From Phallusia mammillata (lineage: Eukaryota), in assembly GCA_965637545.1 (NCBI GenBank), contig OZ281501.1, forward strand, positions 16,678,001 to 16,742,000: 64,000 nucleotides of DNA, written 5' to 3'. Position 1 is the stretch's first letter. Every line of letters begins with the position of its first letter. Below are positions 3,079 through 63,829 of this stretch, one piece after another. The notes under the pieces were generated by a model, which worked only from the letters and a program-made list of their open reading frames with translations, made no database searches and had not been told where the DNA came from. The position numbers and the translations under genes were made by a program.

Positions 3079-6000
3079 CTAAAATATAGAAAAATCTATT
3101 GTTAGTATTCAGTGGTTGTCAGTGTTCAGCGGTTGTTAGTGTTCAGTGGTAGAAATGCCAACAATACTGTCATATAAAAATGCTTACGATTTACCTAAAT
3201 TGCTAGTTATAAAATGCATTGGAAAGTAATGCTATTACTATACAAAATTACAACCTGTCAAAAGTTTAAGTCATTTCAAATTTATCTTATTATATGCGGC
3301 AATGATAACGAGCAATTAGGTATTTATGATGTTTTGACCCTCGGTGTAGTACAACGTTCAATTGCGCTAGTAATACACACGTATACATATATAATAGTAG
3401 AACAAACAGCTTTTCAAGCAAGATTTTCACAAAACGATTGTCTGCTTGATACAAGCATTACATCTAACAATTAGTCTAATAAGAAAATACTTACAATTAG
3501 GACAGCAGTCCACGATCTTAACCTCCCCTCCGTCCTGAAAAAAATAAGTAAATGGGAGAACTATTCACATTGTTACCTTTCAACTCCATGTACTATGTAA
3601 TTTGTTTTCATCCTTTTTGGAGCAGTTAGATGGGTCTCTTGATTATGAGATTAATTTTTAGGTAGGCTTTTAGGTTACAAGGCTGAACTTACCAGCTCGC
3701 AAAGGGTTTTATTGACGGGTTTGCAGTCATCGTACTTGTCTTTTTTAATAACTGCAGGGCAATTGGTCGCCTCATCAATGACACACTCTGCAACCTTACA
3801 ACTATCATTTTGCAATGCGAATGTCGTATTGGGCTGCAAAAAAAACATTGGATATGTACACAACTTTGCGTAGTAAACCTTTTTTACCAAATGTTACTTA
3901 CGGGAAAGACGCCGTTTTCATGAACGCACTTTTCACAGGAGCATTCGTATTTAGGACAGCAAATACCTTTCAGTGGGTTTCTCTCTACAACCTTAAAAAC
4001 AAAGACAACCAACATTACAATTTTGACATGAAATAAATGTATTGCTTATTAGTCTTAAAAAATTGTATGGATAGCTTGTGACTATGCTAACCTAGGACTG
4101 GTCTAGCGTTAGATTTAGATCCGTTTTAGTAATCCAAAGCTTACCGTTACTCGGCGGGATCCTGTAGGACAAGCAAAAGTAGTATCCCACTGTTCGCACA
4201 ACGTTTCAAGTTCCGTATCGTCTCGGCAAACACATTCTTTTTTGGGACAGCAGTCATGGGTGCCTGACAGAACACCAGCAGTTATTTCTTCCGTCAACGC
4301 GCTGCAGGTCAATGTGTAATTGGGACAGATAGTTTCAAGAACATCCACACTATTGCATTCGCAAACAAAATCATCGCAACAGCGATCTACATCAACGGAA
4401 CTCGCGACAGCAAGTTCGTACTGCAGACAGTTTTTGTTTTCATACTCGGATTGGGACAGACAACTATCTCTCGGATCTCTTGTCCTGACGGCTAAGTGGC
4501 AGGACTCCAGGTCGGATTCGTTCAGTCGCTGTGAGCTGCATTCCCAAGTTACGTTGCATCCGTTGAGTACAGTCTCAGTCCAAGTATCGTGGAGGTTTTT
4601 AACCTCACCGTTTTCTAACTCACAAACGTCACATCTGCAAACGTATTTGTTGCAGCACCCGTTTGTGGCCGGATCCTTTTCAGCCAGTTCGACTGGGAAA
4701 TGATTTTCAGGGCATTCTGGAACAGGGGTAACAGCTGTTGCATTGCAGACTATTTTGTATGTGGGGCAGCACTCTTGTCGAGGGTTTTCTGCCACTGTAG
4801 ACGGAGTGTACATCTCACATGCATTGGGTTTATCATCTGGATATTCTATGTAATCGTCTCCACAAGGGCTGCAAGTGCAGTTGTATTCTACACAACACGG
4901 TTGCGGAATACCACTAAATAACTCCACGGCATGTTTGTAGTCTTCGCATGCTTGACTTTCATATTGTTCTTTTGTTGTACATGTTTGTCGGTTTATTTCT
5001 TGAAGTTGTAAGCATACTGAGCATGCATCGTCTGAAGCCTTCAATCTGTTGTTGGAGCACAAATGCGTTCTTGTACATCCGTATTCGTCAGGAATATCGA
5101 TGTTTGAACCCCGGATTATGCGAGTGCCGTTTTGTAATGCACAACTGTCGCAACAGCACGTTTGTAAGGGGCACGTATCATTAGGCTTGCGTATGTCTAT
5201 AATTTTGTAGCCATCATCACAATTGTCCACAGTTCCTCCTCTGCATTCGCATTTGTACTCAGGGCAACATTCGTATTCACCACTGCTTTCACCCGCGTTC
5301 ACTACTATGGTGCTTCTTAAACCTGTGCAGTTCTCTGCTACCTGTTTATAGCCTGGACATTCAGCTGCAAGCACTGCCGTTTCATCACTGCAAATACACT
5401 GATAGCAGGTGTTTTCCCCGTTTGTAAAAGGGGCCGAAATATTACCAGGCTCGTTGCACTCTAGTGGTGTAGATGAATATTCCGGCTCTTTGCATACTGT
5501 AAAAAAACGAAATACCATTAAAATAGCATGTGCCTTGTACAAAGCGGTATGGTATTTGTCTGAGAATAAAATTTACAAACAAAACCACGCAGCAAACTTT
5601 TACTAAGATTCATGTTATTTTTTAATTTCTACACTGCAAATACTACGTCACATTCGACTCTAATTATCTGAATGCCTGACCAATACAACGAACATATACA
5701 TCAATGCCATCGGCTTTTTCGTTTTTTAAGTTAACGCTTGTTTTACTTAATTATTTACCTTTAATCAGTTTTTTGTATAAGACTTACCACATCTGAAAGA
5801 GTCACAGCAGTCGGAAGGATTTGTTTTGTAACTTTCAACCACTTCAAATGATGGGCAGTTTTGTGTCTGGTAGGTTGATGAAGACGGGCACGGCGGTGGT
5901 TCTGAATAAAAATCCCCACATTAACAAAAGAGGATTACAATTTGTGTTTGTGTCATGTAGGTTAAACTCACCGCAGTAATCTTCTACGCAGCAAGGGTTC

Positions 6001-9000
6001 GGGTCGATTTGAGTCAAGTTGTATGTCACTTCCATTCGAGTATCACAGGAGCCGCAGTCTTTCGGCGGAGGACAGATCGCATCGAGTTGTGTTCCGTTGA
6101 AACATCTTACGCTGTCGTCCCGTTTCTTTTCATTACTAAGCACGCATGTATAGTTCTGATTACAACCACTGTTGTCTAACTCTGACCATATGTCGCTTTC
6201 AAGATGTAAACCATCGTTGCCATCCTGACAAGAGTTACAAACACAACCTGAAGTAATAGGGTCATGACAACCGCAACTGTCCTTCATATTGTTGTATATA
6301 TAACCGGTAGGACACGTTGATTCGACTATTGTGTCATTGCATTTGCTTTCGCAATTGTATACAGGACAACACGGTCCGTAGGAAGATATCTCTTTTGATG
6401 CCACTGGAACGTTGCAGAACCCACAGTTCAGTAAAGCGTTACTGTAACTGGGGCACGCAAGTTTTAGAAGCTCGGTGTTATCTGTGCAGTTGCATTCCAG
6501 ACAGGGACATTCTTCAGTGGTGTTGCAACCTTGGACGACTTTTTCGCCAGGATAAGAGCAAAAGACCGTGTCAGGTTCGTCGCATGCTGCATGGAAAAAA
6601 ATATTTGCCAGTTCCTGTTTTAACGTTTAAATCATTAACAAACAGCAATTTGATAATGGTGGAATAAGTCAAAGATGCCTACTGTATGATGATTAAAATA
6701 GAATAGTAAAACATACCGGCGAATAAATCGCATGACTATTAAATGTTTACAGACCAGCTGTGAGGAACAGTTACTTTGCTAAATGCATGTAATGCAGTAA
6801 TGTCTGAAACGACATAGGATATTCATTTACTACTTAGGTTTTGGAAATTTACAAATAAATTGCAAAGCGCTTACTGCATATGTATTCTTGACAGCATACG
6901 CCCGATCTATCAACCGGCATTGCGTACGACCCGGTCCGGTTACAATATTTATCCTCATACTGTTGCTGGGTCAAACACGTTGTTGCCTCTTCATACTCTG
7001 TCCTCAACTCATGACATGAATACTCGTCACCGATTCGTGTGTGTAAGCAACGAACACGAATGTCACAGTGATCGATTTGGTTCTTCAAAGTAACGTTTTC
7101 ACCCGGATTAAACCTTCGAACTTCACCGTTAAAAGTACCCTGACAGGTATAACAAATACACTTCCAGTCCTTGCAACAATCAGTAGGTTCGCTCATGTCA
7201 ACAGCTTCATAATGGGGAGGACATTCTGGCCTTGTTTGGGTGTAGCAACGGTCACAATCACATGACCATGTAGGGCAACATGGATTTGGGCCAGTTCCAG
7301 GGGCGTCATGAATTTTGACCACAGAGCGGTCATCTCTTGAAGAGCAGTTTGCCTCAGCTTCAGAGTAACTCTCACATTCAGTTTCAAGAACGGAAATTTC
7401 TGTGTCGCATTCGCAAACAGGTTTTTTAAAGCATCGGGAATCAGGATTATCGACTGAGTCGCTGTACTGGCCAGGATTGTTACATTCCTTGGGTTGAGGA
7501 GCGAAGGATGCATTGCAATCTAAACACACATAAAATTATAATATTTAAAACAGCCATGCATTTGAGAATCGGTAAAAACACTTCTGCAAGGATAAAACTT
7601 AAATTGTTGTGAGAAGAAAGTTTTGATGGAAACAACTAGCCAACATCACATTAAAAATATTTCAAATTCGTAAAGAATAATATTGTTACATAACATCATA
7701 AATGTGGCTTGCATGATATTTTCTGGGTGAGTTTTATCATGCAAACACCCCGAAAATCCATTTCAGCACAAATTGAACAGCGTGTGTCATCTAATACTTA
7801 CTGCAGGTGTAGTTAACACAGCATGTATTTCCTGAAGGAGATTCTATCAGATATTCATCAGCAAAGCAATCATCAAACTCTTCTTTAGTAGGGCAATCAT
7901 CTCGTGTATTGTGTGTGGTTCGTACAACACCACATGAGTTGGTATGTCGCTCAGGACCGCACACGTAATGCACAACACACCCATCTTCCACCTCTTGCCA
8001 CAATGAACCAAACTAAAAAGTCGAAATAATACGGTTATTTTGCTTTAACGTCCGATTAACAACATTTAATCTTAAGCCAAAATTACAAAAGTCTCTGTTT
8101 TGGTTTGGTTAACCGTACCAAAGCTCAATTAAGTCTGGTTAATAAATGTAACCAGTTCTGTACATTTGCTGAAGATACTGTTTTTCACTGTCTACTCATT
8201 TTGTTTGATTTTTACTTTTGTTGATTTTAAACGACTGTTTTTGAAATTTCTTTCGGAGGTTTTCTTATATAACATAGTTGCCCACGAATGATTTACAGCC
8301 ACCGACCTTCTAAATCAAGGGGATAGTTTGTGTTTTACCTTGAACAGGTTTATCTAAAAGTGACTGTTTTCTACAGATTTTAATTTAATACGTTTGTTTT
8401 TTATACTTATTCTTCCACTTACCGGTTTAACGGTTCCGTCAGGTAGGAAACAGTCGTAACACACCGAAGTGTTACAGCAATTCTCTTCAACCAAAACGTA
8501 GCCTTCTTTTTCTTCAACAGGCGGGCAGGGAATTATTGAAGGTTCGTAACATCCGTCTTCAAGTGGTAAGGGTTTATTTATAATATCGCACTCATAATTT
8601 GTGCAACCATTGCCATCACTATTCGTCTCATTCCATTTGCCGATAAAAGGCCAATGGCGATTTCCAGTGTTATCCTTACAGGAGTAACATGTGCAGAATT
8701 GGTAAGTACAACCACATTCATCATCGTCATAAGCGGGAACAAATCCGTGCGGGCAATCGAATGTTTCAATTTCTGGGCAGAATTCTTTTGGTATGCAAAT
8801 GCAGTCATAATTTGGACAGCATTGGCCTTCCACATGTTCGATAGTGATTTCCTTCATGGAATTGTTCTGGCACTTTTCCCATGCTGTTTGATATCCAGGA
8901 CAAACGTTTTTGTATTCTTCAGAATCGTTTAAGCAAACGCAGTCATAAATTGGACAACACTGGCCTTCTACATGTCTAATAGTGAATTCCTTGATGGAAG

Positions 9001-12000
9001 TGTTCTTGCACTTGTCCCATTTCTCTTGATATCCAGGACAAACGTTTTTGTATTCTTCAGTATCATTTAAGCAAACGCATTTGGAATGAGCGCACACAGA
9101 ACCTTCAGGAGGAACAACGATAGACTTCCAACTACGAGAACATTCGATCGGAGGTGGTACATAGTCGGAATTGCAAACTGCAAAATGTTTTTAAAATGTT
9201 ATGAAAACTTTACAAAACGAGCCCGGATTACGAGAAAACACTCACTCACATACATATATATATAAGTGATAAATGCGGAAAATATTACATCGACTTTTTG
9301 TCGTGTTTACACGTATGTGTTTGATAGTTTTAACATTTTGTACTAAAGTTAGGCAGAAATAAATACACAAATTCGTCCTTGCAACTTAGGAATAACATTA
9401 ATATAAAATGCGACAAAAAGACCCACCACACGTGTAGTTTGAGCAACACGGGTCGGTTGAATCAACTTCAATTAATGTTTGATCTTCTTTGCATTTGTAT
9501 TCTGTACAATTGCTTCTTGGATTGTAAAATTCCTCAAGTATGTAACAGAAGTCTGGGCTTGTGTATTTTTTATCTGAACAAACGTGCTTCACCATACATC
9601 CACCTTCGTCGGGAATCGAAATAATACCGCCACGCTGAACAATAAAAACACCACCGATTATCACTGGTGAAAACGGTAACTTTTTTGTTTTACCGCCTTG
9701 AAGGCGATTTTTTAACAAGACCTAATGGAAGGCATTTTAATGTGGGTGACGCAAAAACAAATGTAATTTGTGTTTTCAAAAAGTACTATTCAATCACATA
9801 TCAAATAGTTTAAGGGGTATGTCTTCCTTGGCTCTCAAAACCTACCAAACTAATCTTTATTGCTGGTTATACTGGTTATCGATGTATCTACTATTTAAAA
9901 GTAAACGCTGGGTTGCGTTGGTTTCAAAAACCTTTTTGAGCTTTAATTAAGTGTTTAATCAAAAGGCACTTCATTATTACTTATGGCAAAAACAAGCGTT
10001 TCTGGCAGGGCATATCGTACCTCAATCTTCTCTTCCTCCCAGAAGCATGCGTCACATGTCACATTAGCACAACACATATTGTTGTCCCAAACCAGTTTGT
10101 AGCCATCAGGAACGCTGGTTACGTTGTAGTCCGGATCACAAGGTGTTGTCACACACTGGTATACATTACAGCAGCCGTGGCACTGGTCGTGAATCGATTT
10201 CGAGCCGTTTGCGACGGTGGTGTAATGCTGACACTTGCCACACTTCGGCGGTTCAGGACAGAGGTTAGGATTACATTTGCACTCGCTCTGTATTGGGCAT
10301 GCACAAAAGTCCTGCTGGGTTACTGTAAAAACGAAAGCAATGGTTATAAATTATAAATAATGTTTACTGTACTATTATTGGTCATAGGTGATGGGTGAAA
10401 AATGCAACAACAGAACTGGGTTTACACAAGCAAACAGACCCTTTGCATCATTTTTAATTTTATAACCGCAACTTGAACATAACTAACCACACACCTTCAA
10501 CATGGCATCCAAGGTACTCCGTGCAGTTTGCATAGCTGTGGTCTGTATGGTTGCAGCCGTCAGGACAGATACAATCCGGGCACTCTACTCCTTCCATGTA
10601 CACAAGAAATTCTTCGGGACAATATTTGATGTCGGTGTAGATGCAAGTGCAGTTTTCTTCGGGACAGCATGTTTCGTTTGGTCTCGTGTAGTTGTTTTTG
10701 GTTCCAAGTCCCCCACAAATCAGTGGAGTACAGGAATCACACTCTAAAGCATAAAAAAACAAGGACAAATCCTGGTAAAATATGCTTAAACAAAAATAGT
10801 TGTATTAAAAACAATAAAACGGCAACATAATATACTTACAAAAAACAAAACGTTTCAAGTAAAACAGTGGGTTAAGTGATATGCAAACGTGCAATTAGTG
10901 TAAAATTCAACTAAATGCAAAATAGGGTAAAAGTAACCTTGTCATATGTTTTTAATCTTATTACATGTAAAAACACTTACCGCATGTGTAATCTTGACAA
11001 CATTTGCCGGTGCTATCCTTTTCTACTGCGTAAGATCCCTCCAGGTAACAGTGCTGTTTCTCAAACTCCTGCTTAGTCAGACACGTCGCTTCCTCTCGAT
11101 ATTCTGTTTCTATCTCGAAGCACGAATACCCGTCGTTTCTGAGTCGTGTGTGCAAGCAACGAACTCGTACGTCGCAGTTATTGCTTCGGCTCGTCAAAGT
11201 AACGTTTTCACCCGGATTAAGCCTATGAACTTCACCGTTAAAAGTCGTCTGACATGTATAGCAAACACACTTCCAGTCCTTGCAGCAATCAGAAGGTTTG
11301 CTCATATCAACAGCTTCATAATGGGGAGGACATTCTGGTCTTTCTTGGTTGGAGCAAGTGTCACACTCACATGACCATGTAGGGCAACATGGGTTTGGGC
11401 CAGATCCAGGGGCGTCATGAATTTTGGACACAGAGCGGTCATCTCTTGAAGAGCAGTTTGCCTCAGCTTCAGAGTAACTCTCACATTCAGTTTGAAGTAC
11501 TAAAATTTCTGTGTCGCATACGCAAACAGGTTCTTCGTAACATTTGTAGTTAGGAATCTTAACTGTATCGTTGTACTGGCCTGGAGCGTTGCATTCGATG
11601 GGTTGAGGGGCAAGGGATGCGTTGCAACCTTAAAAGTACAAAAAAATGCGTATGACCATATTGTGTCACGCTGACAAGTATAATTTAAAGAGTTTCTCCA
11701 AAATCTGATTACTAAAAATGTGAGTGTTGATATGTATAAAAACTACTGTAAAAAATAATTTTTGAAAATGCTGGAGAATGTGCACCAAAAAACTTTAGCT
11801 GGTATTCGAAAGTAATAAGTTAGTTTTCCAGTCACTTACTGCAAGTGTAGTTAACACAACATGTATTCCCTGAAGGAGATTCTTCAAGATATTCATCAGC
11901 ATAGCAGTCATCAAACTCTTCTTTAGTAGGGCAATCGTCTCGTGTATTGTGTGTGGTTCGTACAACACCACATGAGTTGGTATGTCGCTCAGGGCCACAC

Positions 12001-15000
12001 TCGTAATGCACAACACACCCATCTTCCACCTCTTGCCACGTTGAGTCGAACTGAAAAAAATAAAACATTTTAAAATATGTTCACCTATGTTGTGTATCTA
12101 TGTTAACACAAAATCTTGTTGTGTTTGCAATTTTAGTTGTCCTAGTTTTGAAATGGTCGTAAATTCGGATGTTACATTTTTAATTTCTACATATAGCGCC
12201 ATGATGGGGTAAAGAAAACAACACGTTTGTTGTTGTTTTTCCGGCAAAGCAAAAATGTGTTTTAACAAAAGACAGAACATAACCTCGCCTAAGAGGACAA
12301 ACGTGGGTGACTTTTGTTGTTAATTTTTACTTACCGGTTGAACACTTCCGTCAGGCAGGAAACAGTCATTACACAGTGAGGTGTTACAACAATTCTCTTC
12401 AATCAAAATGTAGCCTTCTTTCTCTTCAACAGATGGACACGGAATTACCGAAGGTTCGAAACATTCATCGTGAGATTTTGAATGGTGCTTACACTCGTAA
12501 TTTGTGCATCCACTGCCACCACTCTTTGTCGCATTCCAACTTTCGTGAAGTTTGTGGGGGTTTCCATTGTTATCAAAACACACAAAGCATGGGCATACTC
12601 TTTCGGTACAATTGCACTCATTTGGGTATTCATATACATCGTAATGCTCCGGGCATTTTGCCGGTTCTTGGCATGCTTTGCAAACGCAGTCATAAATTGG
12701 ACAGCACTGTCCCTCCACCTGTGTAATAGTGAATTCCTTTTTGGAATTGTTTTGACACTTTTCCCATGCCTCTTGATATCCATGACAAATGGTTTTGTAT
12801 TCTTCAGAATCGTTGAGGCAAACGCATTTAGAATGAGCGCACACCGAACCTTCAGCAGGTACAACGATTGATTTTTCACCAAGAAAACATTCTGCTTGAG
12901 ATGGTATATAATCGGGGTTGCAACCTAAAAATAATACAAAATTTTAACTTCTCTGTTAACAAAACCTAACGGTTTGGACGTTACAAAAACGGAAAGCTTA
13001 CAACATGTGTAGTTTGCACAACATTGATCACTTGATTCAACTTCACACAGTTTCTCGTCTTCTCTGCAGCTTGGCACAGTACATTCTTTGCAACCTTAAG
13101 AAATAAAATACAGAACATCCCGATTTTTATCAGAGGCGTTTTTAATCCAACTTAGTAAGATAATAAAGTCTGCACCACATTCATATGCAGCATAAGTCTT
13201 TTCCAACACATATTCGATTCAATTAGTACAGTTACTGCATTCAAATAAAAACGAACAGGTTTTAACAGTGGGTCTTCACGCGGTCATTTAGGTGTTGTTA
13301 TTTAGCTGACAAAAATGTTAAGTTAAAATTGTTTTGATTACATTACGCTAGGCCCATTGAAGGCTCCATACCGAATGAGCCGTTCACCTAGCATTCACCA
13401 TCATATGACGTAGAAAAAGAGGTTTACCAAAAACCCACGGTGGAATTTGAGCCCACGTCAGGATTTTTTGCGGGACTCGCGCGTTCGGCGATAAAAATCG
13501 CATTAACCCATAGGCCAGAAACAGCTGTAGATAAATGTTTATTGCGCTGGACCTTCACTACAAAGCATTTATGTGACAGGGTGAGCACATTTGAGTCAGG
13601 AAGATACATATTGATACTTACATTCAATTGGCACACACTCATTGGAACCTGCTGTCTTTAAAACGTAGCCGTCTTGACAGAAACACCCACTGCTAGGCGA
13701 GTTGTCAACACACATCGGATTCTTGTAGTTATCGCAAGTTAAAGTCATTGCACATTTCGGCTCACATTCCCTGTATTCGTAGCCTTCGTTGCAAGTTGTT
13801 TCTAAAAAGAAAGCGAGACATTTTAAACAGGCCGAAACATGTATGACATGAAATCGCTTTTCTTTAATGAAGCATATGAACTGCTGATAAAGCAATGTGT
13901 CCAGTTTGGAAAAAAACATTACCTGGGCAGTTAGCAGCTTCTTTCCATTTGACGCAAATTCCTACAGCCTTGCATCTAGTCGCCAAGGTTTCGATTGCAC
14001 TTGAGTTACAAGCGTTGCACTGCGAATGCAAAGATATTGATTTTAACTTTTGCAATTAAACATGGCCGTATTTTCCCTTTCAAACATAATTGGTTTAGGG
14101 TTTAGGCGTTCTACGTTTGTGTGATTTTTTTGTAGCGCAGGCGTTCGACTTTTTATAAAAAACCTAGAAGCATTTTCAACGTTTTTTTTAAGTAAAATTT
14201 TAAACCTTTTCGAGTTTTCTAGAACAAACTTTCGGCTTACAATATTTTCGTTCAAAAATGCATTTGTAACCGCAACAAACGCGGTTTAAATTTACCGTGC
14301 TTCTTCCTTCCATACAGTTCAAAAGTGCATCCATTTCACAAGGTTTTCGCATCAACATCAGATCAACAACATTCGAACATTCATTCCACACTGGCGATGA
14401 CATAAAACTACAAGTTGTATTGGCGCATTCACAACATCCGTCTTGTAGTCCGCCCGTCGTATATCTGCACCAAATAAGACAATACTTCGTTTGCTTCTTG
14501 TCTATCTTGTTGAAAGTGTTCCACATAAAGCAACCCAGTCAATTTACTTGTTGATGATGTGCTATAGTTGTTTGAACCAAAGTTTGTTATTTTTGAAGGA
14601 TTAACCTTAAATATGTATAGGAAATGAAACTTTTAACGCATGCTCTGTTTGATGTTTTGAGGAGCTACACTAGGTATAGGTAGTTAAATTCTAGTTTCAA
14701 TATTCCATTCCTTATCTCCTTGACGTAATTTGATTCGAGGCAACGGACACAATGACAAATGACACATACAACCTATTCTATATACGTACGTGGTTGTGGT
14801 GCAGTTTGGAGGTGGGTGAACAATGTCCCTTATACAAATTTCAAAGTCGTCCTCGTCCTCTTGGTCGACAAACCAGCTCATACCGAATTCGGTAGCATTG
14901 GTTGTCATGATTTGGTTTCTCATTTCCATATCATCAGAGTAGTCTTCTGAGCACGTTCCTGAGATAAAAAAATAACTGCCCCTATCAAAACGCCGCATAA

Positions 15001-41687: not shown

Positions 41688-41693
41688 TTTATT
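41688..41693 (-). promoter_or_regulatory. Putative polyadenylation signal of gene B
   Basis: Homologous AATAAA downstream of the gene B stop. Confidence 0.55.
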
Positions 41694-41828
41694 CATTTTC
41701 TGTCAAATTTTAAAGGACAGTTGCTTCTGCGATCGCCGTGCGATTATCCGCCATCTGACTTAAAATAAATTGGCCTGAAGCATATGTATAGCGGTAATAG
41801 CGAATAAAAGCACGGCGGACCACGGCTG

Positions 41829-42476
41829 TCATGGGACCGCTATATTCGCTGAAAAATCTGGAAGTTGATTCGACTCGGGAAGTTGACTGGATCTTGCGGC
41901 TGTGGCGTCACATTCAACTTCGGCACAGTCACAATCAATCACTTCAGCGTAGTTGTGAGTTCGCGGAACATTGTCCACACATACCATGGGATATTCTCTT
42001 GGTATTGTAGTGGTCTCCTTGCAACATTTGCAATTGCCTTAATAAAAATATCGGTGTTAGATGCAGCAGCCAATTTAAAATTGTGTGCAAACGAGCGGAC
42101 ATAAAAAGTGGCAAAATGTAACATTAGTTTAAGGTGACGTTTGTACCTAAAGGCGTTTCTGTCTTGTTGTATAATTCGCTTAAACATAATATGGAAGGAA
42201 GTAAATCGGTAACACACCACAAAGTCTGCGTTTAATATTTTTGTTTTTTTATCCGATGCTGTGTACTTTACACTTTCTGATTTCAAATCAAGGTAGTTTT
42301 TCTCGAACATTTCTTACCTTCCACGTCGCCGGTAAGCACGTTGTGACCTCGTATTGTAGTACAAGGGCCCTCGCAAACCGTCACCTCAACTTCATTCGGT
42401 GTCCAACAGAACTGACCTTCCAGGGTTGCGCTCAAAACAAAGGTCTTCACTCTTTTACTGCATTTATCATGGGTGC
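41829..42476 (-). CDS. Gene B CTCK domain and stop
   Basis: Nearly identical to gene A CTCK; the last motif reads CDC instead of CGC. TGA at 41829-41831. Confidence 0.9.
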
Positions 42477-54400: not shown

Positions 54401-57400
54401 AAGATAAAATTATTTTAATCACAATACGCCAGCCACATTGAAGGTTCCATACCGAATCAGCCGTTCACGCATTTCACCACCATACCAAGTCGTAGAAAAA
54501 TCTAGACTGTGGTGGGATTTGAACCTATATTTCGTTCGGTGAAAAAAATCGCATTAACACTTTAGGCCGGAAGAAGCTGTGGATAAATGCTCAACGCGCT
54601 GCAACTTCACTGTTACTGCTTACTACAAAGCGTAATGTGACAGGACAGGCATCGTGTCTGGAAGTGATACTCACATTCAATTGGCACGCACTCATCGGAA
54701 CCTGCCGTCTTTAAAACGTAGCCGTCCTGACAGAAACACCCACTACTAGGCGAGTTGTCAACACACATCCGATTGTTGTAGTTGTCGCAAGTTAAAGACA
54801 TTGCACATTTCCGTTCACATTCCTTGTATTCGTAGCCCTCGTTGCAAGTTGTTTCTAAAAAGAAAGCAAAACATTTTAAACAGGCCAAAACATGTATGAC
54901 ATGAAATCGCTTTTCTTGAAGCAATGAAGCATATGAATTGCTGATAAAGCAATGTGTCTAGTTTGGAAAAAAACAATACCTGGGCAGTTAGCAGCTTCTT
55001 TCCATTTGACGCAAATTCCTACAGCCTTGCATCTCGTCGCCAAGGTTTCGATTGCACTTGAGTTACAAGCGTTGCACTGCAAATGCATAGCAAAGAAAGG
55101 AAGTTTGATTTTTGTAATTAAACCTAACGTTATTTTCCTATTTGTCCTAAATTGGTTTGGGTTTGCATTTTAGGCGCACTATGCTTATGTAATTTTTTTT
55201 GTAATGCAATCGTTTCAACGTACTTTTTTCAATACTAAATCTTTTAAACATTCCAACTTTTCTATAACAAAATTCTAGATCACAATATTTTCGTTCAGAA
55301 TGGTAACCTAAACATGTTACTTGAAACTAGGTGTAAATATTTAGCCAAAGCTTTTCATTTTACGATTTCTAAATGCAACAAATGCGGCTCAAATTTACCG
55401 TGCTCCGTCCTGCCATACAAGTCATTAGTTCATCCGTTTCACAAGCCTGTCGCATCGGATTTAAATCAACAGCCCTCGCACACTCATCCCACACTGACGA
55501 TGACATAAAACTACAAGTTTTGTTGGCGCATTCACAACATTCGTCTTCTGGTCCGCCGGTCGTATATCTGCACCAAATAAGACATAAGTATGTTTGTTTG
55601 TCTATCTTGTTGAAAGTGTACACTATAAAAGCGACCTCCTTAATTTTACTGTTGGTGATGTGCCAGTTGTTTGAACCAAAGATTGGTATATTCAAAGGAT
55701 TAGTCATCAAATATATAAGAAATCTAACTTTTTACATGTGCTGTGTTTAATATTAAGAGGATCTACAGTGGAATAGGTACTTAAATTCCAGTTTAAACAC
55801 AATACGTACGTGGTAGTGGTACAGTTTGGAGGTGGCAAAACAATGTCCTTTATACAAATTTCTAATTCATCCTCGTCTTCTTTGTCTACAATCCAGCTTA
55901 TAGCGAATTCGGTAGCATTTGTGGTCATGGTTTGGTTGCTCATTTCCATATCATCATTGTAGTCTTCTGAGCACGTTCCTGAGATAAAAAATATTTTCTC
56001 CCATCAAAAATCCAAAAATTTACATAGTTCTCTGTGTGTTAGGCTTGAGCGACAAAAACATAAATAGCATTAATAAATCGTAAAATAGAAAAATCGTTTG
56101 CCTTTTACACGCGCCTAACCTTAAATGTTAATGGTTTTTTAGGAATTTTTTCTCTTTTTGTTGTAACCTTTCAAAACAGCATAAACGGTTGCAGTACTTA
56201 CCGCAAAGACCGACAGTTTGGTTGAAGAATCTCTCCCTTGGCAGTATCACGCGCACCAAGGGAAACGACACATAATCAGTAAAAGTCACTTGCAAGTTAA
56301 TTTCCGGGACAAATACTATCACTGCATTCCCGTTTTTTCCTATTGTTATACCGTTACCAAACCAAGGCAGTTGAGGTACAGCGGTATCGTTGACAAAAAC
56401 CTAAAAATAGAGTTAATAGCGGTTTTAAGTTTTGGTACAATTTCAACCAAAAGGTAATCGACCTCATTGCGGTCGTGGATAAATAAAGGCTGACCAAAAC
56501 CACAAACAAACAATCTTTAATTTCAATACAAGCTTCGATTTGGAAAACTAGATCAAAACACCTCTACCCCCATGACAATCATGCCATAATAGTAAAACAT
56601 ATTTCAATAAACATTAATAATATTGGTATTTTTTTTTAAATGGGCATTTTAAAAATAAAACTGCAACATTTTTTACAGTTAATTTACCGCTGGGTTCATG
56701 GGCTGGCCCTCGACTTCACGTACTGTCACCACAGTTCCCTCCCACCTCACAAAAAGATTTTTCACACAAGATAGCTCGGGAAAAGGAGCAAGCGTGCAGT
56801 TGGAGTTGTCGCTGCAACGTAATAGCATAAATTTAATTAGTCGCGTCCATCAAAAATGAAACGCTTTTTATGAAACCGAACAAGTAAACTTTTGTGTGTG
56901 AATTTTTTTCTTGCATACATCAATCAAGCTTTTTTAAGGCATTAAACGTTTTTATTTTCCGAATGGGTTATTACTCTTTAATAAACTTTACTCTTAATAT
57001 ATAAAATCCACATTTTTAGATTATTTTAGAAACTAACCTTACTTTCAAAAGATGCACTTACGTGTAAACGTGAAAACGATCTGACGTTCTTTCTTTCACT
57101 AATGTGTAGATGCACTTGCCCATAAAGCTGTAGAACTGTCCGTCGAAAGTTATGTAATGTGGGTCACCGAATGCATAACAATCACCTAAAAATGGGGTTG
57201 AAGGTAACAATCTTACACTCCGGGAAAAGTTAAGCGGTATGATTTTGCTTGCACAGAAAGATGTTAGAAAAAGAAATAGGAGGGTGTTCAGTGATCCAAT
57301 CGCTTGTCCGAATTTTTGTTTAGTTTTTAGGTCAGTTTTTCTCTAATTATATCTATTGCGTTTGAAGAAAAATGCATTTGTTTATCACCAGAACTTCGGA

Positions 57401-60400
57401 ATACTAACTAGAAACGAATAGCATCTTAAGTGAACATTAAACTGACTAGGGTTTTAAAACAGAATTTTTAAAGCTGGTATTTTACTCACATGGGCATTCG
57501 TATTCGGGACAGCACGGATCTTCTGGATTTTCAATCATCATGGGTTGTAAGTTTCGGGGACAACTAGGTTTACCCTCACCGGAGCATTTCGGTTCAGTAT
57601 CTTCCGCAGTACATTGACAACCGTCGCAAACACATGTTTTAGGTTGGCAAGTTTCTTGATTCCAGATTTCACCCTCCTAAAGAAGTAACGTTTTATTTCT
57701 TTGTCTCTTGGGTGCATTATAATATTTGAAAGTGATGTTTTAACGTTTTTAATACATTGGACTAAACCGCCTTTTCCATTATTTTAACATTCAGTTCCAT
57801 TATGTTGTATAAACATTGAACATGTTTACAAAGACACTATGTATCAGATTTTAATGGAAATTTCGAACAAAATATCACGAAAGCGCATTGAATGCCAAAA
57901 CGCAGGTTGTAAAAACAAGAAACGTTTATTATCGACCCAAAAAGGTTTTTCAAAACATAGACCGAAACGCCTCTTCCTTGGTGTTTTTTTTTAATTATAA
58001 ATTTTTAAAACCAGGAAAACATCACTAGCAACTAAATTAATTTACCCCGTAATGTCGTCCGTTGTCTACACACTTGGCTGCGCAGCAGTTCACTTCACAG
58101 CAGTCGTTGGTGTAGGTTTCATTTATAAGCATTACTTGAGTGACGGAACATGACGACGGGCTCCATGGGCATTTGGATTCGTTGCAAGTACAGCTGAAAA
58201 AAAATGCTCCAACTTACTAAGTCATTTTCACGTTATGTTGAGCTAATCAAAAACATATGTTTGTCATTTTGGCAATTGAAGAAAATTTAGATCTAAGATG
58301 GAAAGCTCAATGGTTTTAATACGATTCTTTGTCATGGAGGCTCCGCAAAATGCCATACATACTAGCATATTAATAAAGCACAAGTTACTTGTTGTCATAG
58401 CAACAATTGTCTGTTGGGTATTCAAGTTCATCTTCATAGTATTCACAGGTTTGCTTCGTAAGGCATCGCGATCTCTTGTTTTCCCTTTCATCGATGGTGG
58501 GACAATTCCCGCCTAAGTCTATGTAGCACGACTACAACAACAATAGGTTAACAGTTAAAGTTTAATAGAGGCAAGTGTCTTTTAAAGACATTGGTAAGGT
58601 TAGGTTTTAATTTCTTTATGCCGGGTGTCAACTGTTTCCAAAATACGTCAACTTATACAAAGTTTCGTACGTGTCGTATTGCTTTTAGTGATAGAAAACC
58701 TAAGTAGACAACAAGTAGATTTTTGTTACCTGTCTGACACAAAGTGGGTCATGCGGTGCGTCCCATGTATCTCCTTCAGCATGATGTACTCCATTGTCGT
58801 CCGTACAGTGAGTACAAGAACATACGTGTTCCTCACAACAGTGATTCAACCAACCCACCTGCACATTTATTAACAGATTAACGATGGGTAAATATTAAAG
58901 CGCTGGTCCTTGTTTTTCGATAACAGTGTATTTGTTAGAAACATGAATCAATTATGGTTTGTACTGTATTCAGTCGCAACGTTTTCTTCCTGTAAGTGTA
59001 ATCAGTTGCTTATTCAAAAAGATTCAAATAAAGTCTAGATTAGGTGCAAAATTGTTCCTAGACAACGTCAAGTTCTCTTTAAATCCGTAATCGATAATAG
59101 GTTTTCACTACCGATCAAAAACCAGTGAAATACATATTACGAAAAAAATATATACCGGTCCAATATGTTTGACATTTGGTTATAGACACTGGTGTTTTGA
59201 ATCTTGCCATGAGCTCCAATCTTTTTCAGGGAATACAACTTTACCACAAATATTTCAGTTTCGCATTAACATCACTTGTAGTTACTTGGGTTTAAAATCT
59301 TACCGTTTGTTTTGTGTTGGGCAACTCGCACGTTACGTTTTCGCATTTCGGATAATCACAAACACATCGGTATGAATCACAGCATGATCCGTTATTAAAA
59401 GCTTCCACCTAAAATAAAATACAGAGATATAAATGGGCTTTTGTGGACACTATATTAAGAAAGTATAACAGGTAATATGTTATTGCTAGTTTGTGATTTG
59501 GTACGTAACTGGGATATCACGAATATAGCCGTGTACAGTGGATTTTCATGACATATAATCAGTGGTGGGATTCAGCCGGTTCGCACCGGTTCGATAGAAC
59601 CGTCTCACGAAATTTTATGAGATTAGCGAACCGGTTAGCATTACTGGTTACTGAAAATTAACTTTTTGTAACAGAACCGACTGCAGAACATGACTTTTGT
59701 GATAGAACCGGCTGACAAAAAATTGAATGTCACCGCTGCATATAATTAAAAACTAAGTAAACACAAAATTGTCATTAGGTATCATCGAAGATAAAGTTAG
59801 AAAAACCGAAACTGTAACTGCAACCTTGACCAACCTTTTCGTAAGATTCGCATTCGAGGCTACTTCCATCATCAGGGCATGGCACATGACTGCATTGGTA
59901 AGTGCTGCAACACGTGGAATTGGCACAAGCTTCTTCTGAACTACTGTCAGCGGCAGTGAGTATTACAGGTTCATAACAATCTTGACAAGGTTCCGGCGTA
60001 GGACAGGTTGCAGGGTTACATACTGAAATATTAACTCGGTGTCATTTCTGTAGGTAATCGAAAGGGAACGGATTGTATACACATTTTAATGCAGTTTTCG
60101 AACTGCATGCATGATTTGCTTTCAACAACTGTTATTGCTTTAGCATTGGCCTTCGTAATTAAATCATCGTACGTGTAGATAAATCTTTAAAGGGTGCCTA
60201 CAACACTGCATTTTATGGGTTGTGTTACACATTAAACTACTGCAGTGCTTAAATATAGTTATAACACATCGAAATTGATGAAAACAAAACGTCAAATTTT
60301 CAAACGTCAAATGAAAATCTGTTAATAACTTTGCATGTATTACATTGTTCGAATTTACAAATAGGTTTGTTGGAAACCGATACTGCAAACCATCCGTCTT

Positions 60401-63400
60401 ACCACATCTGCTTTCGATTTTACAGTCACACTCATGGTTGAATACTTCCGAACATCCAGGAGCATTGCACTCTTCTTCTTCCACACAATGAGAGTCATTG
60501 CCTGGACAAATACATTCCGCCTTCTTGCACGTTATGCCCCTTTCTGCTATCGCGGTAATGTTCCTGATCATCGGGTATTCACATTCCAGGCCTTCTGCAG
60601 CTTCTGGATCGTGCTCGGAATTACATTCTGTCAAAAACAATTATTTTAATGTTGTTTAATGGACAAGTCATATGTGCGGTCATCCTTCAAGCTAGGTTAT
60701 GTTAAGCACGACTCTTAGTGCTTAAGTTTTTAGATTCTTTTTAGGCATTTTTTGACCAGTAACATCTTTAACGCACAAAGTCAAAACAGAAAATACAAAA
60801 TGTATCCGGTAAGCTTGTCATCGTAAGTTACAAACCACTTGGAATATAACAACAATTTGTAGAGACTGAATTGTATCAAGGTTGTTCTAAGCTTAAAATA
60901 TCTCAACACTTCCCCAAGCTAATAGTTGCTAACCGGTGGAAAATTTCTCACCAGTGGGAATTTATGTACGGGGGGAGGGAAATAGTTTAAGTCATTGACA
61001 CTAAAATTGCACAAAAACATTGTTATAAAACTAACCGGGAGGAATTCGAATTTGGTGATTGGCTTTAGTGGAAAACTACACATAAATGATTAAGAACCAC
61101 TGCTCTAAGCCAAAAAACATTTTTTCCAAAAAACTATTTCTATCTTAACATTTTCTATAGCTTGTATTTGCACTTACTATGTGACCTAACTAAAACTGGT
61201 TACTCACGGCAGTTGAGTTTATCACAACATCCTCCATGTGTTGTTTCAACGCTCGGTCGCTTGTCAGTGAAAAAGGGGCAGATTTCATTTGGACAGTTGT
61301 AATCGGATGGCGAAGAGCTATAGCAGTCACCATCACTCACACAAGTGTAGTTTGTGCAATCGTGAATCCAGTTTTGTCCAGGTAACTGTATTGAATTTAA
61401 TAAGAAAGTCGGTGGAGAGACGCATGTAAAGAACAAACTAGGTTGTTAAATTTTATTCATATAACTCAAAAATATTACTGGAGACTTTAAAAGCTAAATA
61501 TACTGGGTGACCCCAGAACTCGTGATACTTTTACAGAAAAGTCTTGGAAAAAATGCTGAACTGCATGATACTTGCTTTAAGATTGACACTACTTATTTAG
61601 GCTATTACTTGAAAACTGTACACTTAAATCTCTTTACAACCGAAACAAATTCTAACCTTGGTTTCGTTGTTGAAAACGCAGTAACGACACTCACATTCAA
61701 ACGTTGGACAGCATTCGCCAGGTCGAGCTGGAACTTGAATCTGTAACAAATTAAACTGACTTGTAAAGCTGGAGTAAATCGTCAAGATGGCCGAGTGAAT
61801 TGGAGCAAACGTTCATGTTTACGAGGTTGAGGGATGTAATCGTGTCTTAGCCATTATGTTTCTCTAATCGATAAGGTTAAGGCAATGTTACTGCAAACCA
61901 TGAGAATAGGATGGTTTCAGTTTAAGTGAAGGCACTAACTATCAAATGCACGAAATGAAATACTAACTGATTTAACAAACTTGCATTAAAACTGGCAGTT
62001 TGACTCGGTTGAAAAGAAAAGTATAACGAGCATACAAAATGCTGAAAATTTTCAAAAACGTGCCAAACGCCTAGTAAAATGATTAATTATGGGTGTCACT
62101 CTCTATTCTGTTACCGTTCTCGCATAGGTTTCCACGTTATATATTATATATCACAAATTTGGAACTGTTAATTTCCAGGCCTAAATTAGTTATCTATCAT
62201 ATATACAGATTTCGTTTGTGCAAGCATCTTCAGTGTCTAAAAATACAACACAAACTTATAAAAACCAATAAAAGGTAGATGTTTCTAGGTATGTTACAGT
62301 GGCAAGCTTACTTTTTCTTCGTGTTGTTTGCATTCTACGTCGCTTCCGTCATCACACGGTAACAGCTCACATCTGAACTCGGGACAACAACTGTTGTTTA
62401 AGCATGATTCCGCACTTCCACTAATGCCACCACTGAATGTCGTAATGGCTTCGGAGCAATTGCCGCAATCCGGTGCGCCTTGGCATCTATTTAGGTCACA
62501 CCCTAAAACGTGTGTTTTAGTTAAGTATTTCCAATGTTCAGCTGATGTTACTGAAAGTAGTTGGTTTTAATTCTAGTACGTATAAAAGTCTGGTAACTGA
62601 TGTACATCATGTCAGGCTAAGGAAAAATTCACATACACTGGGTTAACCTAAGAAAGTTTCACATACAAACAATTGAAAAGATATGTCCTTCGCTTCTGGT
62701 GGCGTTTTTCGTACTTATTGTAATAACATTGTATGCCAACACTTAAACACTGTTTGAAAGGTGGCTGTGGCGTTAAGTAGTACATAATTAGCCGAAGTCG
62801 GATATAGATACATTTGGACTGTTTTTATAACGTTTAAGCTAGGTACTTACTACACGTGCTGTCAATAACGCAGCCACAGTCCATGTTCAGATCTTCGTGG
62901 CATCCATGAGTTGTGCAGTTGTTTCGTTCCACACAGTGACTTTCGTCAGTTGGACAAACGCACTCCGATTTCTGGCACGTCAACTCGTTAAAGTCGTAAT
63001 AGGTTGTGTTAAGCACTTTCGGGTGTTGACAAGTGACAGAGGCATCAAATGCAGGGTCGTATTCCGGTTTGCATTCTGTGTAAAAATACAAACAGTTTTG
63101 GTGTTGAGCTGTTGCAAGTTAAATGAATCGACATAATACGTTACCCTGCTGGTACAATTAAACATTAAACTAATAAATTTAAACAAAACAACACTTTCCT
63201 CGTACATATATTGTTTGGGAAACTTAACTTACCATAATGATGGTGACCTGAATAGGACATTGAAATGTTGGTATAAATAATACATTTACCAGAAATTTCC
63301 ACCGGTTAGCAACTATTTACCAAACCACTTGGAACGTATCAACAATTTTTCGAGGCTGAAATGTATCAAGGTTAACAATACTCCATGCCAATAGTTGCTT

Positions 63401-63829
63401 ACCGGTGGAAATTTCTCACCAGTGGGAAATTATAAATCGTCGGAGCGAAATAGTTTAAGTCAGTGACACCAAAATTGCACAAAAAAATGTCATAAAAATA
63501 GCCGGGAGGAATTCGAATTGGGTGATTGGCTTTAGTCGAAAAACTTCACCTAAAAGTTTAAGAACCACTGATCTAAGACAAAAATACATCAACATTTTCC
63601 ATAGCTTGTATTTGCAGTTTCTATGTGAGCTAACTAAAACCAGTTACTCACGGCAGTTGAGTTTATCACAACATCCTCCATGTGTTGTTTCAACGCTCGG
63701 TCGCTTGTCAGTGAAAAAGGGGCAGATTTCTTTTGGGCAGTTGTAATCGGCTGGCGAAGCGGTATAGCAGTCACCATCACTTACACAAGTGTAGTTTGTA
63801 CAATCGTGTATCCAGTTTTGTCCAGGTAA
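41829..63829 (-). CDS. Gene B: tandem paralog of gene A, 3' portion only (central Cys-rich modules, D4, stalk, CTCK); 5' part lies beyond the window
   Basis: Exon-by-exon homology to gene A with conserved lengths and phases: 41829-42037 (209), 42318-42476 (159), 43533-44884 (1352), 46305-46949 (645), 47365-47575 (211), 52012-52659 (648), 52872-53082 (211), 53373-53962 (590), 54675-54854 (180), 57062-57185 (124), 61208-61385 and 63652-63829 (178). No stops or frameshifts seen in the exons checked. Confidence 0.88.
47077..47176. mobile_element. Small fold-back insertion, gene B-specific
   Basis: Inverted ends GTTTATAGAGCTCTTCTGGCA / TGCCAGAAGTGCTCTATAAAC enclose two copies of ATTCCGACGTTCCGACGTCCTA. 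Absent at the gene A site ~7640. Confidence 0.6.
48037..50971 (-). repeat. Gene B-specific tandem array of ~795-bp exon+intron units (three 477-nt phase 0-0 exons plus a 551-nt related exon)
   Basis: Exons 48037-48513, 48831-49307, 49625-50101 and 50421-50971. Donor-site spacing is 794, 794 and 796 bp. The introns are near-identical. Confidence 0.92.
51558..51863. mobile_element. hAT (Charlie-like) MITE, 306 bp, gene B-specific
   Basis: TIR CAGTGGTTCTCAA / TTGAGAACCACTG. Flanks TTTTAAGG / TTTTAAAG (7/8). Not seen in the homologous gene A intron 10744-10980. Confidence 0.85.
54675..57185 (-). CDS. Gene B D4 assembly with GDPH
   Basis: CYAFGDPHYITFDGQFYSF... plus the downstream VWD, C8-like and TIL exons, matching gene A. 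Confidence 0.85.
59560..59738. mobile_element. hAT-type MITE, 179 bp, gene B-specific
   Basis: Imperfect TIR CAGTGGTGGGATTCA / TGAATGTCACCGCTG. Perfect 8-bp TSD CATATAAT. Empty site CATATACT in gene A at ~18889. Confidence 0.88.

What the first reader, a model, noticed from the sequence alone, without database searches (positions are those of the whole stretch)
4145..63829. Locus behaves as an exon-shuffling diversification system around fixed polymerisation ends
Seen: CTCK and D4 are conserved and colinear between paralogs. The Cys-rich stalks differ by module copy number, fused exons, an exon array, an intra-exon duplication and mosaic patches, and all changes checked keep the frame through symmetric phases. 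Some homologous exons are far more diverged in protein sequence (e.g. 10495-10743 versus 51233-51478) than the CTCK exons. Inference: a recombination-driven variable polymer family with constant assembly modules and variable-length, variable-surface rods, as expected for recognition, adhesive or barrier proteins.
Basis: inference. Interest (0 to 1): 0.72.

Follow-up and report, generated by a model that had tools for sequence, protein, structure and literature searches.

The report
Tandem sea-squirt VWF/mucin-like rod genes
Two neighbouring sea-squirt genes for giant von Willebrand factor/mucin-type polymer proteins differ by duplicated exon blocks and swapped patches made by ordinary recombination, but all parts evolve under similar purifying selection, so there is no sign of a dedicated diversification system.

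Summary
The window holds two minus-strand tandem paralogs, A (2434-~39800) and B (41832-beyond the window). They belong to a four-gene cluster. Their proteins have three N-terminal VWD-C8-TIL assemblies, a D4 assembly, a C-terminal cystine knot and about 2,800-3,300 aa of Cys-rich stalk.

Spliced RNA contigs support one modelled junction in each gene.

- Supported: recombination. A twin exon switches from grouping by gene to grouping by position (p 1.5e-6). Noncoding identity ranges from about 80% to 99% (p 3e-34). Variants in other individuals mostly carry paralog bases.
- Not supported: adaptive surface diversification. dN/dS is 0.22-0.43 in D assemblies, stalk and cystine knot alike, and does not exceed 1 in any modelled exon or sliding window. 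The diverged exons also have high dS.
- The "constant" cystine knot sits in a tract whose introns are 98-99% identical, which indicates recent gene conversion. D1, D2 and D4 are as diverged as the stalk.

The stalk is a repeated ~200-aa VWC-like supermodule, found by sequence only in ascidians.

The scan's first readers had already noted parts of this on this window and the adjoining one.

The parts
2434..3078 (-). Gene A C-terminal cystine knot: exons 2920-3078 and 2434-2639 (stop codon 2434-2436)
   Evidence: The last exon matches the human MUC2 cystine knot (7qcu_A 746-794, E 0.005). The C-x-G-x-C and C-x-C-C motifs are visible in the translation. Protein identity to B is 100% and 90%.
3495..3991 (-). 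Gene A: three small exons before the cystine knot (3902-3991, 3693-3833, 3495-3534)
   Evidence: Splice and phase chain. 97-100% nucleotide identity to B.
4145..13094 (-). Gene A stalk 2, about 2,088 aa in 13 exons here plus the three small exons at 3495-3991. Includes the giant exon 4145-5496, twin exons 6875-7519 and 10981-11628, and the diverged exon 10495-10743
   Evidence: Exon models. An iterated HMM shows repeats of one ~200-aa supermodule. AlphaFold2 model with pLDDT 90.9. Weak VWC-type fold matches.
8792..9079 (-). Intra-exon 138-nt (46-codon) tandem duplication inside A exon 8423-9177
   Evidence: Self-BLAST at 86% identity. The repeated CVCLND...CCP.YD unit is visible in the translation.
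9427..10322 (-). A exons 10021-10322 (302 nt, phase 1-0) and 9427-9634 (208 nt, phase 0-1). The second has no counterpart in B. Only the first ~185 nt of the first align, to the start of B's fused exon
13622..16347 (-). Gene A D4 assembly (VWD with a GDPH motif, C8, TIL), seven exons
   Evidence: Pfam VWD, C8 (weak) and TIL. Exon chain and comparison with B give a pooled dN/dS of 0.43.
16652..23257 (-). Gene A stalk 1, about 721 aa in 13 exons, with a single copy of the 225+191+84+178-nt cassette at 20301-22322
23769..39028 (-). Gene A N-terminal part: CUB, EGF-like, D1, D2 and D'D3 (VWD-C8-TIL assemblies)
   Evidence: Pfam run exon by exon: VWD x7, C8 x4, TIL x4 (these counts include the D4 ORFs at 13599-15367) and CUB with E 2.8e-16.
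41832..42476 (-). Gene B cystine-knot exons (41832-42037, 42318-42476)
   Evidence: Colinear with A and splice sites kept. The flanking introns are 97-99% identical to A's.
43533..54132 (-). Gene B stalk 2, about 2,326 aa counting the three small exons at 42893-43386. Includes giant exon 43533-44884, twin exons 46305-46949 and 52012-52659, and diverged exon 51233-51478
   Evidence: The intron 52660-52871 is spliced out in RNA contigs of runs X8 and X9.
48037..50971 (-). B-specific array of three 477-nt phase 0-0 exons (period 794 bp) plus the fused 551-nt exon 50421-50971
   Evidence: Self-BLAST at 87-92%. Exon models. Copies 1 and 2 are 97.9% identical, copy 3 about 87%. No RNA contig was seen on the array, which is not proof of absence.
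54675..57185 (-). Gene B D4 assembly
   Evidence: All seven exons are open, with AG/GT kept.
57490..63829 (-). Gene B stalk 1, the part inside the window: cassette copy 61208-63075 and the last exon of the extra copy, 63652-63829
   Evidence: The extra copy continues to 65457, outside the window (locus L001).

Best explanation
A and B are two recent tandem duplicates within a four-gene ascidian cluster (Z, A, B, C, all on the minus strand).

What the proteins are. They are secreted giants of roughly 4,600 and 5,100 aa (my sum of exon lengths) built on the von Willebrand factor / gel-forming mucin polymer scaffold. The order of parts is CUB-EGF cap, D1-D2-D'D3, stalk 1, D4, stalk 2, cystine knot. 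The mucin PTS region and the VWF A domains are absent. In their place stand long chains of a VWC-like, disulfide-rich ~200-aa supermodule.

How they probably work (inferred by analogy with VWF and MUC2). Tail-to-tail dimers would form through the cystine knot, and head-to-head multimers through D3. The VWC-type chains would form a stiff, glycosylated stalk.

How the genes evolve (shown). Because the stalk is coded by many homologous exons, unequal crossing-over and gene conversion repeatedly add, fuse or overwrite repeat units. Only in-frame products survive. Exchange between and within A and B leaves a mosaic of old and young tracts. All parts are under similar purifying selection.

The result is paralogs with different rod lengths. 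There is no evidence of selected hypervariability or of a dedicated mechanism.
For: - Duplication and colinearity.
- Four-gene cluster.
- Domains: Pfam VWD, C8, TIL and CUB found exon by exon. The last exon matches the MUC2 cystine knot. No VWA, CysD or PTS-rich ORF on gene A's strand.
- Stalk as one repeated supermodule: 248 HMM domain hits.
- Confident AlphaFold2 models: pLDDT 90.9 and 88.1.
- Fold: residues 119-215 align to VWF C6 (Z 3.6), CCN3 VWC (Z 3.5), VWF C4 (Z 3.4), collagen IIA VWC (Z 2.7) and NELL2 (Foldseek top hit is NELL2). The N-terminal 95 aa best match the MUC2 tail 4802-4889 (Z 3.7, 22% identity). Language-model neighbours are NELL2 and VWC families. NCBI names the Styela homologue 'kielin/chordin-like'.
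- Frame-preserving structural changes.
- Purifying selection throughout.
- Gene conversion.
- Spliced transcripts: the junction 52659|52872 (B-type) appears in two RNA runs, and the A junction 8423|8012 in one.
- Variants in other individuals match paralog bases at 11 of 13 sites, against 7% expected (p 2e-11).
- MUC2 tail made of VWC domains that form a dimeric stalk: PMC10082768.
Against: - The fold matches are weak (Z 2.7-5, Foldseek E above 0.01). Pfam VWC does not hit, so 'VWC-like' rests on several weak but concordant lines.
- The cystine knot was tested only exon by exon (E 0.005).
- Polymerisation is inferred by analogy and not shown.
- No RNA contig covers B's array exons, so their inclusion in mRNA is unproven.
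- dN/dS from two sequences has little power to detect selection on a few sites.
- The RNA contigs come from assemblies and could be chimeric between paralogs. Some paralog-matching variants could be retained ancestral states.
Confidence: 0.75

Rival explanations
1. The locus is a selected diversification system: constant assembly ends with rods whose length and surface are kept variable for recognition, adhesion or barrier specificity.
For: - Real recombination and length variation.
- Paralog-derived variants segregate in other individuals.
- D'D3 and the cystine knot are the best-conserved parts.
- The phase 0-0 array exons could be included in any number without breaking the frame or a module.
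Against: - dN/dS is 0.22-0.43 in all parts and does not exceed 1 in any modelled exon or sliding window.
- The diverged exons have high dS.
- The identity of the cystine-knot region extends into its introns, which points to conversion rather than constraint.
- D1, D2 and D4 are not constant.
- No copy-number variation could be resolved in the DNA contigs, and no alternative splicing was seen.
Confidence: 0.12
2. Structural tuning. The paralogs (and Z and C) are kept because different rod lengths set different spacings in an extracellular polymer, for example a filter-feeding mucus net or a gut or tunic matrix, possibly as A/B heteropolymers. Conversion at the cystine knot would keep the tails compatible.
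For: - Four paralogs with very different stalk lengths, all with open frames.
- Near-identical cystine-knot regions in A and B.
- Purifying selection on the stalk modules.
- Transcripts of both types occur in the same RNA run.
- Endostyle-specific VWF-like genes are known in Ciona (PMC8462739). A Ciona gel-forming mucin sits in the gut chitin membrane (PMC6109156).
Against: - No tissue, protein or structural data for these genes.
- Orthology to CiVWFL or Ci-GFM1 was not tested.
- Homogenisation of the 3' end could be neutral.
Confidence: 0.3
3. Artefact or decay. A and B are two haplotypes wrongly assembled in tandem, or one copy is a pseudogene.
For: Ascidian genomes are highly heterozygous. 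No run holds more than 68% of the sampled words of A's exon. No RNA was seen on B's array.
Against: - Noncoding divergence of 11-27%, and large structural differences, far exceed the roughly 1-3% allelic divergence implied by the share of words held (my estimate).
- Every modelled exon of both copies is open with its splice sites intact, and dN/dS is well below 1.
- B-specific sequence is present without any difference in an independent DNA run (1,245-nt contig).
- The B-type junction is spliced in RNA.
Confidence: 0.04

Closest known systems
Human von Willebrand factor (VWF)
   Same: D1-D2-D'D3 ... D4 ... chain of VWC domains ... cystine knot. The stalk module aligns weakly with VWF C4 and C6.
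   Different: No VWA domains. The VWC-like region is about 2,800-3,300 aa instead of six C domains, and a second stalk lies between D3 and D4. There is an N-terminal CUB/EGF cap. The stalk modules are too divergent for Pfam VWC.
Gel-forming mucins (MUC2, MUC5B)
   Same: The same D-assembly and cystine-knot scaffold. The D4 VWD carries a GDPH motif. The last exon matches the MUC2 cystine knot. The N-terminal sub-module best matches the MUC2 VWC1/VWC' tail. Length variation by tandem repeats parallels the mucin PTS VNTRs.
   Different: No PTS-rich or CysD sequence. The variable-length element is a folded, disulfide-rich exon cassette rather than a disordered glycosylated repeat.
Ascidian homologues: Styela clava 'kielin/chordin-like protein' XP_039251056.1, Clavelina lepadiformis LOC143464528 (XP_076818448.1), Ciona savignyi H2Y7H2
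   Same: They share the stalk supermodule (E 7e-31 to 2e-45). Read by eye, the Styela and Clavelina proteins also end in a cystine knot and have a D4-like part (the 187-aa Ciona savignyi fragment was not inspected).
   Different: They are uncharacterised automatic predictions, and their orthology to A, B, Z or C is not resolved. True kielin/chordin-like proteins have VWC repeats followed by one C-terminal VWD, with no D1-D3 and no cystine knot.
Ciona Ci-GFM1 and the CiVWFL endostyle genes
   Same: Tunicate members of the multi-VWD expansion. Ciona is reported to have 17 multi-VWD proteins (PMC4948705). Ci-GFM1 has the D1-D2-D'D3-D4-VWC-CK scaffold (PMC6109156).
   Different: Ci-GFM1 is 2,880 aa with chitin-binding domains and a small PTS region. 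The relation to CiVWFL1/2 (PMC8462739) could not be tested because no sequences were at hand.
FCGBP and zonadhesin (tandem D-assembly cassettes)
   Same: Multi-VWD extracellular proteins whose repeat cassettes have been duplicated in tandem (my own knowledge; the FCGBP structure paper was only listed).
   Different: There the repeated unit is a whole VWD-C8-TIL assembly. Here it is a VWC-like supermodule.

Membership tests
VWF / gel-forming-mucin polymer scaffold (multi-VWD, cystine-knot proteins) | Three N-terminal VWD-C8-TIL assemblies (D1, D2, D'D3) | tested here: met
   Pfam run exon by exon on gene A: VWD at 38024-38266, 34415-34723 and 25747-26082; C8 at 35907-36245, 31399-31920 and 24532-24708; TIL at 35475-35636 and 30444-30599.
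VWF / gel-forming-mucin polymer scaffold (multi-VWD, cystine-knot proteins) | D4 assembly (VWD-C8-TIL) upstream of the C-terminal tail | tested here: met
   VWD at 15083-15367 (E 1e-4), weak C8 at 13867-14055, TIL at 13599-13919 (E 8e-7). Seven open exons in both A and B.
VWF / gel-forming-mucin polymer scaffold (multi-VWD, cystine-knot proteins) | C-terminal cystine-knot (CTCK) domain | tested here: met
   The last exon aligns to the MUC2 cystine knot, 7qcu_A 746-794, E 0.005. Motifs are visible in the translation. Pfam on single exons gave nothing. The joined domain was not searched.
VWF / gel-forming-mucin polymer scaffold (multi-VWD, cystine-knot proteins) | Tail of VWC domains between D4 and the cystine knot | tested here: inconclusive
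   No Pfam VWC hit. The structure models match VWC domains only weakly, Z 2.7-3.7. Language-model neighbours are VWC/NELL2 at scores of 0.76-0.81.
VWF / gel-forming-mucin polymer scaffold (multi-VWD, cystine-knot proteins) | Disulfide-linked dimerisation (cystine knot) and multimerisation (D3) | not testable with these tools
   Needs protein biochemistry.
Gel-forming mucin in the strict sense | Central PTS (Pro/Thr/Ser-rich) O-glycosylated domain, often with CysD | tested here: not met
   Among the 147 minus-strand ORFs of at least 50 aa in gene A, none is a PTS domain (only two short ORFs reach 36-37% P+T+S). No Mucin2_WxxW hit.
von Willebrand factor in the strict sense | VWA (A1-A3) domains between D3 and D4 | tested here: not met
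   No VWA hit in any ORF of gene A. The interval holds stalk 1 instead.
Kielin/chordin-like protein, BMPER | VWC repeats followed by one C-terminal VWD-C8-TIL, with no N-terminal D1-D3 and no cystine knot | tested here: not met
   Gene A has D1-D'D3 at its N-terminus and a cystine knot at its C-terminus.
Selected diversification locus (Dscam-type exon arrays, conversion-driven receptor families) | Excess of amino-acid change (dN/dS above 1) in the variable parts | tested here: not met
   dN/dS is 0-0.88 per modelled exon and 0.22-0.43 pooled, and does not exceed 1 in any sliding window. One search also gave 0.76 for the CUB/EGF ORF segments, which have no exon model and may include intron.
Selected diversification locus (Dscam-type exon arrays, conversion-driven receptor families) | Alternative or mutually exclusive use of array exons | tested here: inconclusive
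   No RNA contig lies on 48285-51436 in runs X8 and X9. Contigs cannot show absence.
Selected diversification locus (Dscam-type exon arrays, conversion-driven receptor families) | High population variability in copy number or sequence | tested here: inconclusive
   Single-base variants that match paralog bases are seen in RNA and DNA runs of other individuals. Short contigs cannot resolve copy number.

The most novel reading that the evidence does not exclude
The four-gene cluster could encode the rod elements of a regular extracellular net, such as the endostyle filter net. Rod length would be set by cassette copy number and possibly by optional inclusion of the phase 0-0 array exons, and would determine mesh spacing. 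Gene conversion at the cystine knot and D3 would be maintained by selection so that paralogs can co-polymerise. That would make this a length-coded polymer system, not just drifting duplicates.
Probability: 0.12. Interest if true: 0.7.

Novelty: new variant of a known kind. Interest (0 to 1): 0.4.

Why it matters
It documents an uncharacterised family of VWF/mucin-scaffold proteins, recognisable by sequence only in ascidians. In these proteins the glycosylated mucin domain or the VWF A domains are replaced by thousands of residues of folded VWC-like rod.

It also gives a clean example of how homologous exon cassettes, unequal crossing-over and gene conversion reshape such genes while keeping the frame.

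For mucin and VWF biology, it offers a natural set of proteins with very different stalk lengths on the same polymerising ends. This would be useful for testing what the VWC tail does.

It does not reveal a new diversification mechanism.

Tried and rejected
- Pfam on single stalk exons and on whole ascidian homologues gave nothing. The whole-protein blanks are probably a composition-filter effect, because a TIL-like stretch and a cystine knot are visible by eye.
- The word-based protein search with the 450-aa exon found nothing in its length range. The exhaustive profile search was therefore used.
- Cystine-knot exon 2921-3076 has no PDB sequence match.
- Foldseek on both models gave no hit at E 0.001 or better.
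- My first automatic exon chain missed many exons and was replaced by curated chaining.
- A first estimate of dN/dS 0.82 for D4 came from ORF segments that included intron, and a value of 1.01 for one D4 exon came from a 3-nt indel misalignment. Both were corrected.
- The 50% identity of the intron pair 10744-10980 / 51479-52011 is confounded by a high-copy repeat inserted in B, so I did not use it as evidence of regional divergence.
- The DNA 'goes back' joint at 53200 is an edge effect of the laid stretch.
- Literature searches for the expression site of these genes found nothing specific.
- Spliced models were searched exon by exon, by reference.
Full report
**What is in the window.** The window is G000:C8:16678001-16742000 of a 240-Mb genome that earlier scan notes call a sea squirt. 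It has no N. Self-BLAST shows a colinear tandem duplication, A 846-22533 versus B 40172-63294, at 76-91% identity including introns. With flanking DNA fetched from the same contig, the colinearity continues to the 5' ends of both genes.

Searching the whole genome with the largest stalk exon and with the last exon shows four related minus-strand genes in a row. I call them Z (about 50 kb to 2 kb before the window), A (2434-~39800), B (41832 to about 18 kb past the window end) and C (further on). In the giant exon, A and B are 94% identical in protein, while Z and C are 41-44% identical to A.

**Exon models and transcription.** Every paired exon keeps AG/GT and an open frame in both genes.

The joined step was left out.

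Two runs listed as probable RNA proved to hold spliced sequence. Both carry a contig that skips exactly the modelled B intron 52660-52871 (GT..AG on the gene strand). One carries a contig that joins the end of A exon 8423-9177 to the first bases of A exon 7802-8012. So transcripts of both types exist and are spliced as modelled at these two junctions. No RNA contig lies on B's array exons. With contigs, that is not evidence of absence.

**What the proteins are.** Run exon by exon, Pfam finds on gene A's strand only VWD (7 ORFs), C8 (4), TIL (4) and CUB (2, best E 2.8e-16), plus one weak CBM_14 hit and two weak hits to unrelated families. These are arranged as CUB/EGF-like, D1, D2, D'D3, then a Cys-rich stalk, then D4 (whose VWD carries a GDPH motif), then a second stalk.

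The last exon aligns to the cystine knot of human MUC2 (E 0.005). There is no VWA domain, no CysD and no PTS-rich frame.

By my sum of exon lengths, stalk 1 plus stalk 2 total about 2,809 aa in A and about 3,273 aa in B.

An iterated HMM shows that the whole stalk is built from one ~200-aa supermodule (248 domain hits across the cluster and its homologues).

An exhaustive profile search of 1.84 billion representative proteins found only 16 relatives. All the named ones are ascidian: Clavelina lepadiformis 'uncharacterized', Styela clava 'kielin/chordin-like', and Ciona savignyi.

**Fold of the stalk module.** AlphaFold2 with a 35-row alignment of repeat copies gives a confident model (pLDDT 90.9). 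Its C-terminal third aligns, weakly but repeatedly, with VWC domains: VWF C6 Z 3.6, CCN3 Z 3.5, VWF C4 Z 3.4, collagen IIA Z 2.7, and NELL2. It also aligns with fibronectin type I pairs.

The N-terminal 95 residues, modelled separately (pLDDT 88.1), best match the MUC2 tail 4802-4889 (Z 3.7, 22% identity). From the residue numbers in PMC10082768, I place that range just after the VWC1 N-leaf, that is, the VWC1 C-leaf and VWC'. Language-model neighbours point the same way.

I therefore read the stalk as a greatly expanded VWC-type tail. This is a resemblance supported by several weak lines, not a proven membership.

**The structural differences** all check out:
- A 138-nt in-frame duplication inside an A exon.
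- Three 477-nt phase 0-0 exons in B, each beginning like a 211-type exon and ending like a 590/755-type exon. Any number of copies would regenerate complete modules at the junctions.
- A fused 551-nt exon in B.
- Exons present only in A.
- A 678-nt four-exon cassette, single in A and double in B.

Beyond the window, gene Z carries a 3,479-bp unit repeated about 5.3 times at 98-99% identity. The giant exons of Z and C differ from A and B by whole-module insertions.

The frame is always kept. However, exon phases are not all symmetric (0-1, 1-0, 0-2 and 2-0 also occur), so the frame is preserved at cassette level.

**Selection.** Per-exon dN/dS between A and B ranges from 0 to 0.88. Pooled values are nearly uniform:

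| Region | dN/dS |
|---|---|
| D1 | 0.25 |
| D2 | 0.28 |
| D'D3 | 0.27 |
| D4 | 0.43 |
| Stalk 1 | 0.28 |
| Stalk 2 | 0.22 (conserved exons), 0.32 (diverged exons) |
| Cystine-knot end | 0.26 |

Sliding windows over the most diverged exon never exceed 1.

What varies is depth, not selection. dS runs from 0.06 at the cystine-knot end to 0.40-0.70 in the diverged exons. This is relaxed, not positive, selection.

D1, D2 and D4 (78%, 82% and 68-100% protein identity) are no more constant than most stalk exons (87-92%).

**Recombination.** Noncoding identity along the A-B alignment is strongly heterogeneous (chi-square p 3e-34). The introns around the cystine knot are 98-99% identical against a mean of 88.6% (p 2e-21). 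The 'constant' 3' end is therefore, at least in part, a young conversion tract.

In the twin 645/648-nt exons, informative sites support grouping by gene 16:3 over nt 240-440 and grouping by position 22:1 over nt 440-645 (p 1.5e-6). This is intragenic concerted evolution with a breakpoint inside the exon.

In the spliced RNA contig from another individual, 11 of 13 differences from the reference carry the base of a paralogous exon copy, where 7% is expected (p 2e-11). Several of these differences also appear in DNA runs from other studies.

Two caveats apply. Assembled contigs can be chimeric, and some matches may be retained ancestral states.

Recombination and rod-length variation on a shared polymer scaffold are real. 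A selected 'variable surface', or a dedicated diversification system, is not indicated. The processes are the ordinary ones for genes built from homologous exon repeats.

The family itself is a new architectural variant of the VWF/mucin kind and is undescribed in the papers I could search. Its function, tissue and polymer behaviour remain inferences by analogy with VWF and MUC2.

First readers of this scan had already noted the array, the conversion patch and the cassette duplication, on this window and the next.

Noticed in passing
window 51437-52027: A high-copy repeat (summed contig depth about 1,500-2,000 in DNA runs, against 20-50 nearby) sits in B's intron between exons 51233-51478 and 52012-52659. 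The homologous A intron is 237 nt against 533 nt in B. This is probably a transposable-element insertion.
   Followed up: partly
G000:C8:16630075-16648626 (47,926 to 29,374 bases before the window start; loci L009-L011): Gene Z holds a 3,479-bp unit repeated about 5.3 times at 98-99% identity. Each unit carries a 1,764-nt phase 1-1 giant exon and a 111-nt phase 1-1 exon. This is either a very recent stalk amplification or a collapsed or expanded assembly.
   Followed up: partly
window 16224-16347 (A) and 57062-57185 (B): The first D4 VWD exon carries a GDPH motif (YGDPHY / FGDPHY). In MUC2 this is the autocatalytic Asp-Pro cleavage site (PMC10082768).
   Followed up: no
gene A strand, window 2400-40200 (ORF not located): One ORF gives a weak Pfam CBM_14 (peritrophin-A chitin-binding) hit, E 0.0065. 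It may be chance in Cys-rich sequence, but Ciona Ci-GFM1 does carry chitin-binding domains.
   Followed up: no
proteins P0003, P0007, P0002: Pfam returned no family at all for these 2,146-3,613-aa ascidian homologues, although a TIL-like stretch (Styela P0007) and a cystine knot (P0007 and Clavelina P0003) are visible by eye. This looks like a composition-filter effect on long Cys-rich proteins, so Pfam blanks on such proteins should not be trusted.
   Followed up: partly
window 48037-50101: Array copies 1 and 2 are 97.9% identical (dS 0.04). Copy 3 differs from both with dS 0.32-0.35, more than the typical A-B dS of about 0.2. The array may therefore be older than its youngest duplication suggests, or copy 3 may have escaped homogenisation.
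   Followed up: no
window 846-1369 versus 40172-40707, and 39975-40172 versus about 82421-82619 (past the window end): The duplicated unit includes the 3' flank and the intergenic DNA, so the repeat unit is the whole ~40-kb gene plus spacer.
   Followed up: no
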